From contig NW_003314278.1 in assembly GCF_000143415.4 (NCBI RefSeq), positions 2,252,408-2,316,407 of the forward strand: a stretch of DNA of 64,000 nt. The letters are read 5' to 3'. The notes below the pieces were generated by a model. That model saw nothing but the letters and a program-made list of their open reading frames with translations. It made no database searches and was not told the DNA's origin. Position numbers and translations under genes: made by a program. Below, one piece after another: positions 29,086 through 59,806 of the stretch; the stretch's first letter is position 1, and each line of letters starts with the position of its first letter. This DNA is from Selaginella moellendorffii. Its lineage: Eukaryota > Plantae > Lycopodiophyta.

Positions 29086-31047
29086 TCATAGTTCTTCTGG
29101 CTCCTTGGACTCCCCAGCGTATATGTTTGAGACGAGGACGTATGGAACACCGCTCTCTGGTTGCAACTCGGACATTTTCGTCCCGGCTCGCGAGCCGATC
29201 TCCAGATTTCCATGAACCCGGCACGAGTTTAAGAGCGTCGTCCACACCACGGCGTCAGCTTTGAACGGCATTTTCTCGATCAGTTCCGCGGCCTCCTCGA
29301 GCATGCCAGCTCTCCCAAGAGCATCGACGACGCAGCAGTAGTGATCCAGCGAAGGATCCAATCCAAAGTCGCCGGACATGGACACGAAGTATTGGGTCCC
29401 GCGATCGACGAGGCCGATATGGATGCACGCCGTCAGAGCACCAACAAAGCTGCTACCAGTCGGCGTCACCCCCTCCAAGAACATGAGCTCCACAAGTCCG
29501 AGAGCCTCGCGAGCGTGGCCGTTCTCGGCGTAGCGCTGGATCATCGAGTTCCAGAAGACAACGTCGCGGTGCGGGATGGACTCAAACATCTCCCTCGCCA
29601 CCTCCAGCCTCGCGTTTTGAGCGTAGAGCATCAGCACGCAGCTGCACGAGAGAAGGCTCCACTGCGGCATCCTGTCGAAGAACTCTTTTGCTCCCTGGAT
29701 GCTACCATTCTGAGCGTGGCCGGCGATCATCACCGCCCACGAGACCACGTCCCTGTGAGGCATACCATCGAACAATCCCCGGGCTTCCACCAAAAGATCC
29801 TTTTGAGCGTAGGCCGAGACGATGGTGTTCCATGACACCATGCTCCACTGCGGCATTCTCTGGAAGGTTGTTCCAGCTTGCTCCAGATCGTTGCCTTGTG
29901 ATGCATACGCCTGGATCATCGAGTTCCACGACACGACATCCTTGTGAGGCGTATCATCAAAGATTTCCTTTGTGGAATCCAGGTCTCCAGCTCCTGCAAA
30001 TGCCTGCGAGATCGCGTTCCACGATATGGTGTTCCGCTCAGGCATACTGGCAAACAAATCCCTTGCGTCCTCCAAGTGCCCACTCTCGGCATATGCTGAT
30101 ATCAAGCAGTTCCAGCAGATCACACTCCACTCCGGCGTTCGATCGAACACTTCCTTCGTTTCTCTCACAAGTCCAGCTTGTGCATAGCTCGCGAGTACAT
30201 CCGTCCACGAGATAACATCTCTTTGCGGCATCAAATCAAACAAGAGCTTCGACTGGGAGTAATGCCCGTTCTCGGCATATGCGTGAATCATCGCGTTCCA
30301 GGCCACAAGATCCCAGTGGGGCATTTTCTGGAAGATCCGGGCAGCCTCGATCGTATGCCCATTCTCCGCGCAAGCCCCCAGCATCGCCGTCCACGACACC
30401 ACATTCCTCTGGAGCATCCCCTGGAAGAAGAACCGGCTGGCCTCGGCGGAACTGCGCGTGTAGGCCTTGGCCATGGCGTTCCAGCACGCCACGTCCCGCT
30501 CGGAAGCGCTGATCCCATCGAAGATCATCCGCGCCTCCCCGACGCGCCCGCTGTGCCCATACGCCGCGATCATGATCGTCGCGGAGAAGATGTTGGGGCG
30601 ATCGATGTCGTCGTAGACCATCCGTGCCTCCTCCACGCTGCCGCATTTGCCATACATCTCCACCAGGAGATTCGCCAGGAAGCGATTGCCGTGCCAGGCG
30701 CTGCCCAGGATCCGGGCGTGGATCGATCGCCCGCGCAGCAGATCCCTGGCGCCGCCGCACTCGCGGACGATCCGCGCGAGCGCATCGACGCTGCTCTCCT
30801 CGCTAGGGCAGAGCCGCATATTCCACGAATCTTCGAATTTATTTGAAAGCATTTGGGGGCAAAGTTCTCGCAGTCCGTACAGCAACTTACACTGGAAATT
30901 TCGCGGGTATAAAAAGGGATTCCAATGAGCTAAGTGCGCGTACGTCAGTGCTGGGATTGAATGCAATGGATTGGCCAACACATTGTCGTGAGTGTCCGGA
31001 AAAGAGAAAGAGCGCACCACGCAATTTGTGATCGCCCCAAATTCCAT
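29086..31047 (-). CDS. PLS-class PPR protein (SS array plus E domain, no DYW); real start probably the ATG at 30819
   Basis: LLVEMYGKCGSVEEAR, repeated VVSWxxM motifs, HYCCVVDALGRAG, WTTLLNSC, PYVLVSNIY. Confidence 0.92.
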   Translation of the reverse strand: MEFGAITNCVVRSFSFPDTHDNVLANPLHSIPALTYAHLAHWNPFLYPRNFQCKLLYGLRELCPQMLSNKFEDSWNMRLCPSEESSVDALARIVRECGGARDLLRGRSIHARILGSAWHGNRFLANLLVEMYGKCGSVEEARMVYDDIDRPNIFSATIMIAAYGHSGRVGEARMIFDGISASERDVACWNAMAKAYTRSSAEASRFFFQGMLQRNVVSWTAMLGACAENGHTIEAARIFQKMPHWDLVAWNAMIHAYAENGHYSQSKLLFDLMPQRDVISWTDVLASYAQAGLVRETKEVFDRTPEWSVICWNCLISAYAESGHLEDARDLFASMPERNTISWNAISQAFAGAGDLDSTKEIFDDTPHKDVVSWNSMIQAYASQGNDLEQAGTTFQRMPQWSMVSWNTIVSAYAQKDLLVEARGLFDGMPHRDVVSWAVMIAGHAQNGSIQGAKEFFDRMPQWSLLSCSCVLMLYAQNARLEVAREMFESIPHRDVVFWNSMIQRYAENGHAREALGLVELMFLEGVTPTGSSFVGALTACIHIGLVDRGTQYFVSMSGDFGLDPSLDHYCCVVDALGRAGMLEEAAELIEKMPFKADAVVWTTLLNSCRVHGNLEIGSRAGTKMSELQPESGVPYVLVSNIYAGESKEPEEL

Positions 31048-31170
31048 GTCAATCCCTTCGACTCTATGTTGGTGTGCATACGGACGATACGGAAAAGAAG
31101 AAGCAAAAAACTATGGAAGCCTTGTAGTGCCATGAGCATCGCAAATTGCTCGCTTTGCCCTCTCAGTGAC

Positions 31171-31564
31171 GTACGTAGTCCGGCCATGTGCCCCATTGCG
31201 AGATTTCTTAACAAGAATTTATAGTTTCCCAGTGTTATCCGTACACAGGGCGCTGGATGGATGGAACCCTAATCTCGGAACAACGCAAAAGCAAAGTGGA
31301 AATGGCCAAGTGTCGCATTTATGCCATGGCCGTGTCGCATGTGACAGCCGTACGAAACGGCACCTCTCGGGCCTGGCCCAAAACCCAGCCCCACGGGAAC
31401 CAGTCCGTACCGGCCCCCCAATTGTACGGCGCACGCGGACATGAGGCTTGCACCGGCCGTACAAGACCCACCGACCCTCCCTGCGGTGTTCGTACAGCAT
31501 TTAAAAGGGTGCGGCCGTACAGAATACGGAAGTGGCCACGTTAGGGTTGAGCGGGAGCGTACGG
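31171..31564. promoter_or_regulatory. Cluster of SBP-binding GTAC/CCGTAC sites upstream of the SPL gene
   Basis: CCGTAC on either strand at 31239, 31348, 31405, 31424, 31457, 31515 and 31559, plus GTAC at 31171 and 31492. Confidence 0.7.
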
Positions 31565-31901
31565 ACGGGCGCTCACCACATAGAGCCTGTTTGTTTGTTT
31601 TGGTATATTGGTATTTTATTCTCCCTCTCTCTCTCTCGCGCTGGTTGTGCCCTTCCTCTCTCTCTCTCTCTGTTCTTCCCAGGCTAGGGCTACCAGGAGA
31701 ATCCTTCCTCTCGCCAATTCCTTCGATCGCTGAGATTAGGGTTCTTCGCTTCTTCCTCTTTGTCCGTCTCGCCAAGAAAACCACGCCAATTTCTTCTCCC
31801 TCTCCTTTTCTCTTTTTAGGTCGCGAGCGCCTCGGCTTCCTCATGGCTTGATTGATTGGCAGATTGATTGATCCCGCGGCGCGCGCGCGCTCCACAGCAG
31901 G

Positions 31902-34106
31902 ATGATGGGTCAGCAGCCGCAGCAAATGGTGGGGATTCACCACCATCACCACCTCCACCACCACGAATCCGAGCAGCAGCCGATTGTCGTGGACCAGCAG
32001 CACAAGCAGCACCACCACCATCACCACCAACACCACCACCACCACCAGCAGCTCATGGAGGAGGAATCCGGCCAGGCAGGAGGAGGAGGAGGAGGAGAGG
32101 GCCTCCCGGAAGACGAGGAAGACGTGGAGGAGGACCCCGAGGACGACGATCCCGCCGAGCTCGCCGCGGCAGTGCCATCCTCGGGCGCCATCGGCGAGGG
32201 GATGGCTCCCGGCAATGCCGACGCCGCCAGTCTTGTCCCGGTTCTGGGAGTGGATTCCTCGCGGAGGCAGCACCAGCGACCAAGAGGAGGAGGAGGTAGC
32301 GGTGGTGGTGGTGGAGGAGGAGGAATCTCGAGTTCTTCGTCGGGGTCTGGCGGAGCTGCTACAGCGGTGGTGGTGGCCGCCGCCGCCGCCGCGGCGGGGC
32401 TCGTTCTTCCAGTTCCTTGCTGCCGAGTGGATGGTTGTGGCGAGGATCTGTCCACTGCCGGGGATTACCACCGGCGGCACAAGGTTTGCAAGCTGCATGC
32501 TACGTTGCCCAAGGTCATGAATCACGGCCAGGAGCAAAGATTCTGCCAACAATGCAGCAGGTTGGATCTCTCCTCCATATTTTCTCTCTCTTGCGTTTCA
32601 TTTCTTCGTTGTTCTTCTTTCCAATCTTTGATAGCGAGAGTGGAATGATTTTTTTTGGCGTGTGTTTCTTTGCATGCTTCTGCTTGCTTGATCCAGTGAT
32701 CACTGACAGAAAGATTTTTCTCTCGGTTGAGTTGGCTGATTTTTTTTCTGGTGGCTACTTTCAGATTTCATTCCTTGTCGGAGTTTGACGAAGGCAAGCG
32801 GAGCTGCCGGAAGCGCCTGGCGGGGCACAACGAGCGGAGGCGGAGGCACCAACCGGATTCGCTCGCCACAACTTCCAGTGAAAGTCCTCCATTAACTCAG
32901 GGTACGCTTTCTCCGCTCTCTTGCATGTTCATGAGTTCAAGTCTCTTCTCTCTCTTTTTTTTTTTTCTCTTCTGCGTGTACGGAAGTTCCTTTTTTTGTG
33001 ATCGATATAAGTTTTTGGTTCTTCCCTTTTCCTCATCTATTTTTGGTTTTCAGGCCGGGAGAGCAATAAAAAGCCGCGAGAGTGGAAAGGGCGTGGAAGG
33101 GGAGGGAGGAGAGGAAGAAGTGGGCTATCCTTCTCCGCACGGGGACCCGGAGACGACCCCAGCAGCCCCCTCGTCTTGCGAGACGAAATCCAGAGTATGT
33201 CCTCTAAGCGAAGAGCGGTGAAGTCAGGTGAAGAGTCATTCTCCATCATTTTCAATGATGCATTCCCAGAGCGTGACAGTGTCAAGGGTAAAATGAGCCT
33301 TCGAGTAGCAGACATGATGGAGAAGAGAGTTGCCGGAGAGTATAAGGAGATTGACGAGCTTGATATTGATATAGCAGACATGGAGCAAGTCAAGGAGGGG
33401 CTCGACCTGGGTGAAGGCGTCGTCATACCTCCGCTGCCGCTCAAAAGGGACGGGAAGCTGTCGGTGCTCAAAGGCTGGCCACCCCAGGAAGGCGCTGTGC
33501 TCAACCCGGACGAGATGCAAATCGAGACGAGCCTGACACCAAAAGACGAGCTTGAGAACAAGCGAGCATGGCAGAGAGGTACGCTCTTTTTTCTTCGATG
33601 TTGTTCTAAACCGCCAACTCGTTCGTTGCACAGATGACAAAGAGACGCTGCTCCACTGCTTCTGGGAGTGCTCCAAAGTCCAGCCGGTGTGGAGATGGGC
33701 CGCGAGGCAGCTGAGCAAGCTCCGGGGCAGCAAGGTGAAGCTGGAGCTCCGGCAGGCGGTGTTCGGCGGGAAGCTGGATAGCTGGGCCTCGCAGGAGAAC
33801 GTTTCGGTGTGGAAGCTCTTGCGGGGGATAATCCTCTGGCAGATATGGTTGGCGAGGAAGGGGAAGGCCTTGTCCGGGATCCAGTGGACTTCGAACAAGG
33901 TGATCCGGGCGGCGTGGGTGGACCTGATGATGTACGCCATGCAGGATTGGTTGGAAGTTTACAAGAAGAAGGAGACCGGCAAGATGGAAGACGCTCACGA
34001 GCTGCGCGGCAAGTTCGATTCCAAGTGGCTGGTGAACCAGTTTGCTGGGAAACGGGCCGAGTGGAGCATGGTTTGGAAGGATCCCGACGACGTTTTGCTC
34101 GATTGA
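31902..34106 (+). CDS. SBP-box (SPL) transcription factor, ~597 aa, last exon LINE zf-RVT-like
   Basis: SBP domain [11 protein letters not shown]...YHRRHKVC...RFCQQCSR|[26 protein letters not shown]. Exons 31902-32560, 32765-32901, 33054-33578 and 33634-34106 join in frame (1794 nt) through GT-AG introns. Confidence 0.85.
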
Positions 34107-59381: not shown

Positions 59382-59690
59382 TTGACTGGCAATGTGTCAA
59401 AGTGAATATTGTAATTTGACTCCGCCAGCTGGCCAACCGCTAGTTAAACATTGACTAGCATTGACTAGATAACTCGGCCGCCGATAAACATTGACTAGCA
59501 TTGGCTTTGACATGGCACTAGAGCTGGCTAAACATTGACTAGCTAAACATGACGAACATTGACTAGATACTCTAGAAACTGGACCGTTGACTAAATATTG
59601 ACTAGCATTGACTACATACTGTGCCACCGTTGACTATAGCTGTTGCTAGATAGTGCTTTGACTCGGCCACCGTTGACTAGAACTGACTAA
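59382..59690. repeat. Degenerate CATTGACTAG tandem repeat (13 TTGACT W-box cores)
   Basis: TTGACT at about 59382, 59416, 59451, 59461, 59491, 59535, 59559, 59587, 59598, 59608, 59630, 59658 and 59673. Confidence 0.8.
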
Positions 59691-59806
59691 AGATAGAGAG
59701 CACTCGCTACAAACAATGTACAATTTCGCCGTTCTCCTCCTCTCTCGTCCTTGGTCGCGGGGAAGAAGCCAGTCTCACGCAGAGATCTCCAACTCGAGAG
59801 AGCGCG

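What the first reader, a model, noticed from the sequence alone, without database searches (positions are those of the whole stretch)
31171..31564. Dense array of SBP-binding CCGTAC sites in the SPL gene's own promoter: candidate autoregulatory or copper-response module
Seen: 7 CCGTAC (either strand, two as CCGTACAA) within ~330 bp plus 2 more GTAC, 340-730 bp upstream of the SPL ATG. About 0.2 would be expected under uniform base composition. The flanks differ, so this is not a tandem repeat. Known: SBP domains bind a GTAC core (CCGTAC), and clustered GTAC is the CRR1/SPL7 copper-response element. Inference: a feedback loop on this SPL, or control by an SPL7-type factor. The region is also upstream of the divergent PPR gene.
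Basis: partly seen in the sequence, partly recalled or inferred. Interest (0 to 1): 0.75.

Follow-up and report, generated by a model that had tools for sequence, protein, structure and literature searches.

The report
SBP-site cluster in SPL promoter
A lycophyte SPL transcription-factor gene has eight binding sites for its own protein family packed into the 300 bases before its transcription start, and related genes in a clubmoss and in liverworts have similar site clusters, which points to an old, untested circuit in which SPL proteins control an SPL gene.

Summary
There are 7 CCGTAC and 9 GTAC in 31171-31564. Simulated 64-kb sequences gave at most 3 CCGTAC per 400 bp. The cluster is not a tandem repeat and shows no sign of being a dispersed repeat.

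Spliced RNA-like contigs of the SPL gene begin at 31540 at the earliest, and none covers 30806-31409. The sites therefore span about -300 to +19 of the probable transcription start and bracket a TATA-like box.

Six of the 7 sites fit the published SBP consensus CCGTAC(A/G). The gene's own SBP domain is intact.

The only orthologues found (Diphasiastrum, two homeologues) keep a pair of GTACGG 24 bp apart. The pair lies in the one conserved island of an otherwise unalignable upstream region. Marchantia MpSPL2, the best-scoring bryophyte relative, has 13 GTAC in 430 bp upstream, and M. paleacea keeps this cluster. Two other SPL genes used as controls have no cluster.

Best reading: a real array of SBP-binding sites that puts this SPL under control by SPL proteins. 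Whether that is its own product or another SPL is unresolved. A knock-out of MpSPL3 lowers MpSPL2 in Marchantia (PMC12993094).

The copper-response reading has little support. An earlier scan note reports another CCGTAC cluster in this genome, upstream of a KIN17 paralogue. No binding or expression data exist.

The parts
31239..31564 (.). Core array of eight SBP-type sites. Seven are CCGTAC (31239+, 31348+, 31405+, 31424-, 31457+, 31515+, 31559-) and one is TCGTAC (31491+). GTAC cores lie at -299, -190, -133, -116, -81, -48, -23 and +19 relative to 31540.
   Evidence: Six of the 7 CCGTAC are followed by A or G.
31166..31175 (.). TGACGTACGT: a GTAC core inside an ACGT/TGACGT context. It is one arm of a 12-nt inverted pair with 30939-30950. 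It is probably not an SBP site of the CC-flanked kind.
   Evidence: (I7).
31500..31508 (+). TATA-like TTTAAAAGG, 32-40 bp before the earliest RNA contig end. It is bracketed by TCGTACAGCA (31491) and CCGTACAGAA (31515).
   Evidence: TTTAAAAG occurs only twice in the window.
31540..31901 (+). 5' UTR of the SPL gene. RNA-like contigs begin at 31540 (X5), 31668 (X17) and 31704 (X7). It is CT-rich and contains telo-boxes at 31541 and 31736.
   Evidence: table 8.
31902..32557 (+). SPL exon 1: a His/Gln/Gly-rich N-terminus and the first 46 residues of the SBP domain.
   Evidence: PF03110, E 1e-16; joint 32557/32762, GT..AG, in three RNA-like runs.
32762..32900 (+). SPL exon 2: the second part of the SBP domain and the nuclear localisation signal.
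   Evidence: PF03110 positions 47-74; joints.
30875..30880 (+). Outlying site GTCCGTACAGCA, 58 bp upstream of the likely PPR ATG (30819, minus strand). It shares 10-12 nt with sites in the array.
   Evidence: D2, D9.
29086..30819 (-). Divergent PPR (E-motif) gene. The ORF is open back to 31047, but the likely start is the ATG at 30819.
   Evidence: In one search, an in-frame 12-nt insertion in a DNA variant after 30802 is consistent with coding sequence there.

Best explanation
This is an array of repeated binding sites for SBP-domain (SPL) proteins. It forms the proximal and core promoter of a group-2-like SPL gene in a lycophyte. Eight sites (KCCGTAC[A/G]-type) lie between about -300 and +19 of the transcription start, and two of them bracket a TATA-like box. 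One or more SPL proteins occupy the array, so transcription of this SPL depends on the SPL level in the cell. The regulator could be the gene's own product (feedback) or a broadly expressed SPL of another group (cascade); sequence cannot tell which. Shown here: the sites exist far beyond chance, they lie upstream of the transcribed region, they fit the published consensus, equivalent sites are kept in orthologous promoters, and the gene's own DNA-binding domain is intact. Inferred: that SPL proteins actually bind, the sign of the effect, and which SPL acts.
For: Enrichment: 7 CCGTAC in 326 bp against 0.07-0.24 expected, with a maximum of 3 per 400 bp in simulations. Flank bias: 7 of 9 GTAC are CC-flanked inside the cluster against 10 of 133 outside. 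Position: spliced RNA-like contigs from three runs begin at 31540, 31668 and 31704, and none covers 30806-31409. Motif fit: CCGTAC(A/G) is the published SBP element (PMC6508781, citing Liang 2008 and Franco-Zorrilla 2014). GTACGG is the top DAP-seq and ChIP motif of SlSPL-CNR, and the crystal structure shows contacts to all six bases (PMC13458263). Own domain: Pfam SBP hits in both exons, and the translations show the zinc ligands and the QQ pair. Orthologues: an HMMER search with exon 3 finds only Diphasiastrum proteins. Locus L001 has GTACGG at -162 and -138 of the ATG, 2 of only 6 sites in 35.7 kb. Locus L003 has GTAC at -332, -315, -296, -147 and -123, and all 5 CCGTAC of that 34-kb locus lie between -298 and +596. 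The GTACGG pair sits in a 58-column island that is 79% identical, against 36% further upstream. Marchantia MpSPL2 has 13 GTAC in 430 bp at -2043 to -1611 (corrected P about 1e-7) and M. paleacea keeps the cluster. Controls without an upstream cluster: S. moellendorffii SPL14-like (L004) and Diphasiastrum 12G023300 (L006). Published genetics: an MpSPL3 knock-out strongly lowers MpSPL1 and MpSPL2 mRNA (PMC12993094). OsSPL9 binds its own promoter (PMC13222354).
Against: There are no binding, chromatin or perturbation data for this locus. The transcript start comes from contig ends, which cannot fix a start. The Diphasiastrum orthologues have only 2-5 sites, and their transcription starts are unknown, so those sites could lie in the 5' UTR. 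The Marchantia cluster lies 1.6-2 kb from the ATG, has different flanks (only 2 of 13 are CC-flanked), and sits in a region that is 82% conserved as a whole, so its GTAC cores are not singled out. Only two control SPL genes were available. The allelic variant contig keeps all the cores, but only about 0.5 hits were expected, so this carries no weight. Calling this gene group 2 rests on best hits, not on a tree.
Confidence: 0.6

Rival explanations
1. Copper-response module. The array is a set of copper-response elements bound by an SPL7/CRR1-type factor, so this SPL is switched on or off by copper deficiency.
For: Clustered GTAC cores close to the start are typical of SPL7/CRR1 targets (established knowledge: Kropat 2005 and Yamasaki 2009, as cited in PMC10796333 and PMC12993094). 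An unchecked scan note (s1-408586) reports another dense CCGTAC cluster in this genome upstream of a KIN17 paralogue, and KIN17 is a physical partner of SPL7 in the copper-deficiency response (PMC4091612). The rice SPL7 orthologue OsSPL9 is copper-sensitive and binds GTAC motifs (PMC13222354).
Against: No site has the GTACT form that I recall for the moss copper element (the moss motif is from memory and was not looked up). The gene is a developmental-type SPL whose SBP half-domain scores lowest against SPL7 among solved SBP domains (35 bits, against 57 for SPL12). No copper-related gene lies nearby. In Marchantia it was loss of MpSPL3 (the SPL1/12/14/16 orthologue) that lowered MpSPL2, not loss of the SPL7 orthologue MpSPL4; an MpSPL4 knock-out was not reported (PMC12993094).
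Confidence: 0.15
2. The motif density is real, but the sites serve another factor or the divergent PPR gene. Alternatively it is a by-product of local composition with no role for SPL proteins.
For: The region is a shared 720-bp intergenic space between the PPR ATG (30819) and the SPL start. It also holds telo-boxes, one GGCCCA and a TGACGT element. One further site, GTCCGTACAGCA, lies 58 bp from the PPR ATG.
Against: Site density rises toward the SPL start: 6 of the 8 sites lie within 135 bp of it. The orthologous SPL genes keep such sites with no gene called in the 10 kb upstream. Local composition predicts 0.24 sites. No other plant factor family known to me has a CCGTAC consensus (from memory).
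Confidence: 0.15
3. The segment is a copy of a dispersed repeat or a transposon remnant that happens to be rich in CCGTAC.
For: A LINE-derived exon and LINE fragments lie nearby. A second CCGTAC cluster exists elsewhere in the genome (note s1-408586).
Against: Nothing beyond the 10-12-nt site matches is repeated within the window. In the DNA run, one contig spans 30643-31505 at a depth (250) close to its single-copy neighbours (212-246), and no contig fits two places. The flanks of the sites are unrelated to one another. The findings index shows no look-alike, though a blank there means little.
Confidence: 0.05

Closest known systems
OsSPL9 autoregulation in rice (PMC13222354)
   Same: [quoted passage not shown]
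   Different: OsSPL9 is the SPL7-type, copper-sensitive member, and its binding was shown by experiment. Here the gene is a group-2-like SPL, binding is untested, and the site density (8 in 320 bp at the core promoter) is a sequence observation only.
MpSPL3 control of MpSPL1 and MpSPL2 in Marchantia polymorpha (PMC12993094)
   Same: One SPL controls the mRNA level of the group-2 SPL that is the best-scoring bryophyte relative of this gene. I find a dense GTAC cluster upstream of MpSPL2, which could be the direct target.
   Different: The paper shows expression changes in a knock-out and names no cis element. The Marchantia cluster is 1.6-2 kb from the ATG with mostly TGTACA/AGTAC flanks. The Selaginella sites are CC-flanked and abut the transcription start.
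Copper-response elements of CRR1/SPL7 targets (GTAC cores in CYC6, miR398, FSD1 promoters)
   Same: Several GTAC cores lie close to the start and are read by an SBP domain.
   Different: Those genes serve copper economy and respond to copper. This target is itself an SPL, and neither a copper link nor GTACT-type flanks were found.
SlSPL-CNR binding of unmethylated GTACGG (PMC13458263)
   Same: The hexamer is identical (GTACGG = CCGTAC). The Gln-Gln pair that reads it is present in this gene's SBP domain (RFCQQCSR).
   Different: SlSPL-CNR is a repressor of a flavour gene in tomato fruit. Whether CG methylation gates the array described here is unknown.

Membership tests
SBP-domain binding site (GTAC core, CCGTAC[A/G] / TNCGTACAA) | GTAC core with a C-rich 5' flank matching the published consensus | tested here: met
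   There are 7 CCGTAC plus 1 TCGTAC. Six of the 7 are followed by A or G, 2 read CCGTACAA, and 3 read TCCGTAC. The consensus is taken from PMC6508781, PMC13458263 and PMC12993094.
SBP-domain binding site (GTAC core, CCGTAC[A/G] / TNCGTACAA) | Located in promoter DNA, not in transcribed or coding sequence | tested here: met
   RNA-like contigs start at 31540 or later and none covers 30806-31409. Contig ends give only an approximate start.
SBP-domain binding site (GTAC core, CCGTAC[A/G] / TNCGTACAA) | Bound by an SBP-domain protein | not testable with these tools
   This needs EMSA, DAP-seq or ChIP.
Conserved repeated-site cis-regulatory module | The same motif is kept upstream of orthologues while the surrounding sequence diverges | tested here: met
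   The Diphasiastrum homeologues have their GTACGG pair at aligned columns 470 and 494, inside a 79%-identical island against 36% upstream. Marchantia and M. paleacea both have clusters. Two other SPL genes have none.
Transcription-factor autoregulatory loop | The factor's own recognition motif lies in its own promoter, and its DNA-binding domain is intact | tested here: met
   The array is shown. SBP Pfam hits are found in exons 1 and 2. The C-x4-C-x16-C-x2-H and C-x2-C-x3-H-x11-C ligands and the QQ pair can be read in the translations.
Transcription-factor autoregulatory loop | The factor occupies its own promoter and changes its own transcription | not testable with these tools
   No ChIP or perturbation data are available. 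Control by another SPL is equally compatible.
Copper-response element regulon (SPL7/CRR1) | Multiple GTAC cores near the transcription start | tested here: met
Copper-response element regulon (SPL7/CRR1) | Expression responds to copper supply through an SPL7-type factor | not testable with these tools
   No run with a known copper treatment was available. The run descriptions were coded.
Copper-response element regulon (SPL7/CRR1) | GTACT-type flank, as in the bryophyte copper element | tested here: not met
   None of the 9 cores reads GTACT or AGTAC. The moss motif is recalled from memory.
Dispersed repeat / transposon fragment | Further copies at other loci; repeat-like depth or contig breaks | tested here: inconclusive
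   The window holds no second copy. A single DNA contig covers the segment at neighbour-like depth. The whole genome could not be searched.

The most novel reading that the evidence does not exclude
Arrays of GTAC sites upstream of the group-2 SPL gene (the MpSPL2 clade) are an ancestral land-plant feature, kept in liverworts and both lycophyte orders for some 400 million years or more. On this reading, SPL proteins controlling an SPL gene at the level of transcription is an ancient layer beside, or older than, miR156/529 control. In this Selaginella gene, which has no miR156-type site within 3 mismatches of the canonical target, it may be the main control.
Probability: 0.3. Interest if true: 0.7.

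Novelty: new member of a known kind. Interest (0 to 1): 0.55.

Why it matters
SPL factors time developmental phase change across land plants. Most work on their control concerns miR156 and miR529. A dense and conserved array of the family's own binding sites at the core promoter of one SPL clade would give a concrete cis element for SPL-on-SPL control. A 2026 Marchantia study proposed such control from knock-out data but named no cis element. The array defines short, mutable targets in Selaginella (31239-31564) and in Marchantia (L005:3958-4393). That makes the question of feedback versus cascade directly testable in Marchantia, which is transformable.

Tried and rejected
- **Tandem or dispersed repeat:** rejected.
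- **miR156-type target site in the gene:** none within 3 mismatches. The only match in the window is intergenic, at 59684.
- **Word search with exon 1, residues 100-218:** returned only generic SBP proteins and no orthologue.
- **Contig look-ups for P0027, P0028, P0042 and P0078:** these found nothing on record, so the third Diphasiastrum paralogue and two intended controls could not be examined.
- **Allelic variants in a DNA run:** they spare every GTAC core, but only about 0.5 hits were expected, so this is not evidence.
- **Bacterial-type promoter scan:** irrelevant to a plant promoter.
- **Copper reading:** considered and ranked low, for the reasons given under rival explanations.
- Exon 3 alone was used for the single HMMER job. 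I spent that job because the word search had left orthologues unfound and conservation was the decisive test available.

Full report
**1. Observation**

CCGTAC occurs 18 times in the 64-kb window. Seven of these lie between 31239 and 31564: five on the plus strand and two on the minus strand. This is the densest 400-bp window for both motifs. At the sampled positions, all others hold at most 2 CCGTAC and at most 4 GTAC. GTAC is under-represented overall (142 against 250 expected from uniform composition).

Local composition predicts 0.24 CCGTAC, and the window's own background rate predicts 0.07. The Poisson tails are about 7e-9 and 1e-12. Sixty simulated 64-kb sequences for each of Markov orders 1 and 3 never exceeded 3 per 400 bp. 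The flank is biased as well as the core: 7 of 9 GTAC inside the cluster are CC-flanked, against 10 of 133 outside. There is no tandem repeat, and the only internal similarity is 10-12 nt around the sites themselves.

**2. Where the cluster sits**

Downstream lies an SBP-box gene. Pfam SBP positions 1-46 map to exon 1 (31902-32557) and positions 47-74 to exon 2. Contigs from three RNA-like public runs are spliced at 32557/32762, 32900/33053 and 33576/33632 with GT..AG ends. They begin at 31540, 31668 and 31704. None of the three runs has any contig over 30806-31409, whereas the DNA run covers that stretch. Contig ends cannot fix a start. Even so, the array lies upstream of everything seen as RNA.

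- Relative to 31540, the eight CC/TC-flanked cores lie at -299, -190, -133, -116, -81, -48, -23 and +19.
- A TATA-like TTTAAAAGG lies at 31500-31508, 32-40 bp before 31540. It is bracketed by TCGTACAGCA and CCGTACAGAA.
- On the other side is a divergent PPR gene whose likely ATG is at 30819. Six of the eight sites lie within 135 bp of the SPL start, so the array belongs to the SPL side of the 720-bp intergenic space.

**3. Fit to what SBP domains bind**

The published SBP element is CCGTAC(A/G) (PMC6508781, citing Liang 2008 and Franco-Zorrilla 2014), or TNCGTACAA with GTAC as the core (PMC12993094, PMC10796333). GTACGG, the same hexamer read from the other strand, is the top DAP-seq and ChIP motif of tomato SlSPL-CNR. 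A crystal structure shows contacts to all six positions, with a Gln-Gln pair critical for affinity, and binding is blocked by CG methylation (PMC13458263).

Six of the 7 CCGTAC here are followed by A or G, two read CCGTACAA, and three read TCCGTAC. PMC6508781 found the single element within 1 kb upstream in only 523 Arabidopsis genes, so six in about 330 bp is extreme.

The gene's own SBP domain has both zinc-ligand sets and the QQ pair (translations). Its first half scores best against SPL12 (57 bits) and SPL13A, and worst against SPL7 (35 bits), among solved SBP domains.

**4. Conservation**

A word search with exon 1 found only generic SBP proteins. I therefore used the single HMMER job on exon 3, the part specific to this orthologue group. 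It returned two proteins, both from Diphasiastrum complanatum. A further search added a homeologue that is 84% identical. The earlier scan note s1-418130 had named this orthology; here it was recovered independently.

- **Locus L001 (O6H91_23G037600):** GTACGG lies at -162 and -138 of the ATG. These are 2 of only 6 such hexamers in 35.7 kb.
- **Locus L003 (O6H91_05G070000):** GTAC lies at -332, -315, -296, -147 and -123. All five CCGTAC of the 34-kb locus lie between -298 and +596.
- **Alignment of the two upstream regions:** identity is 36% (noise level) until a 58-column island at 79%. That island contains both GTACGG at the same columns (TGTAGGCCCCGGTACGG.ATCTGG ... AGTACGGA). Identity is 50% from there to the ATG.
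- **Marchantia:** MpSPL2, the best-scoring bryophyte relative, has 13 GTAC in 430 bp at -2043 to -1611 of its ATG. The best 400-bp window holds 12 against 1.05 expected, corrected P about 1e-7, and the cluster is not a tandem array. M. paleacea keeps 10 of them in an 82%-identical region.
- **Riccia fluitans:** a weak group of four lies at -2525 to -2320.
- **Controls:** two SPL genes of other clades, S. moellendorffii SPL14-like (L004) and Diphasiastrum 12G023300 (L006), have no upstream cluster.

*Limits.* There are only two controls. Transcription starts are unknown outside the window. The Marchantia sites have different flanks and lie in a region conserved as a whole. Assignment of this gene to the group is by best hit, not by a tree.

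**5. Mechanism**

The best-supported reading is an array of SBP-binding sites that makes transcription of this SPL depend on SPL proteins. The steps shown and the steps inferred are listed under Best explanation.

Two sites flank the TATA-like box and one lies at +19. Occupancy could therefore either recruit the transcription machinery or obstruct it. Negative feedback is as compatible with the layout as activation.

Two published cases frame the options. OsSPL9 binds its own promoter (PMC13222354). In Marchantia, loss of MpSPL3, the orthologue of AtSPL1/12/14/16, strongly lowers MpSPL1 and MpSPL2 mRNA without any change in MpARF3, and the authors propose that MpSPL3 regulates them (PMC12993094). 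That paper names no cis element. A family-wide promoter survey looked only at 1.5 kb with PlantCARE and reported no element set shared within a group (PMC10796333). The MpSPL2 cluster lies beyond that 1.5-kb limit.

**6. Rivals**

- **Copper response.** Clustered GTAC fits, and an unchecked scan note reports a second CCGTAC cluster in this genome upstream of a KIN17 paralogue. This is notable because KIN17 physically partners SPL7 in copper deficiency (PMC4091612). Against it, no site has the GTACT form, the gene is not of the SPL7 type, and nothing ties it to copper. I give this 0.15.
- **Another factor or the PPR gene.** The position of the sites and the orthologues argue against this. I give it 0.15.
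- **Dispersed repeat.** No support was found, but the whole genome could not be searched. I give it 0.05.

**7. Novelty and score**

Both the motif and the idea of SPL auto- or cross-regulation are known. New here are this array, its position at the core promoter, and its recurrence upstream of the same SPL clade in two lycophyte orders and in liverworts. My paper searches found no report of this. I file it as a new member of a known kind and score interest at 0.55. The wider reading is an ancestral land-plant SPL-on-SPL circuit, in a gene with no miR156-type site. I give that a probability of about 0.3.

Noticed in passing
window 31265-31272 (+), 31541-31548 (-), 31736-31743 (-); 14 sites across the window: The telo-box AACCCTAA occurs 14 times in the window against 1.4 expected. 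Three copies lie in this SPL promoter and 5' UTR. The Diphasiastrum orthologue has TTAGGGTT about 245 bp before its ATG.
   Followed up: partly
L005:3958-4393 (Marchantia polymorpha) and L008:3716-4094 (M. paleacea): There are 13 and 10 GTAC cores in about 400 bp, 1.6-2.3 kb upstream of the MpSPL2 ATG. The two regions are 82% identical. This is a candidate direct target for the MpSPL3-dependent expression reported in PMC12993094.
   Followed up: partly
L007:12723-12908 (Riccia fluitans): Seven GTAC lie in 190 bp between the 3' ends of two convergent SBP genes, the presumed orthologues of MpSPL2 and MpSPL1. This is the densest GTAC window of the locus.
   Followed up: no
L004:11445-11460 (S. 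moellendorffii SPL14-like gene): The only two CCGTAC in 21 kb lie 10 bp apart, about 50 bp past the end of this other SPL gene.
   Followed up: no
window 59684-59703 (-): A 20-mer lies within 3 mismatches of the canonical miR156 target sequence, in intergenic DNA between a PPR gene and another gene. It may be chance.
   Followed up: no
window 30939-30950 and 31164-31175: An inverted 12-mer, CGTACGTCAGTG / CAGTGACGTACG (92% complementary), has a TGACGT core, and its arms enclose 213 bp of the intergenic region. It accounts for two of the GTAC cores that are not CC-flanked.
   Followed up: no
window 33195-33377, 32402, 31703: RNA-like contigs show three variants: an optional in-frame 183-nt intron inside exon 3 (two runs), a 9-nt in-frame insertion after 32402 (one run), and a 13-nt insertion after 31703 in the 5' UTR (one run).
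   Followed up: no
window 30504-30805: Contig depth rises four- to five-fold and many contigs branch off at 30626-30663. Many paralogous PPR genes appear to share this repeat-motif stretch. A DNA variant carries an in-frame 12-nt insertion after 30802.
   Followed up: no
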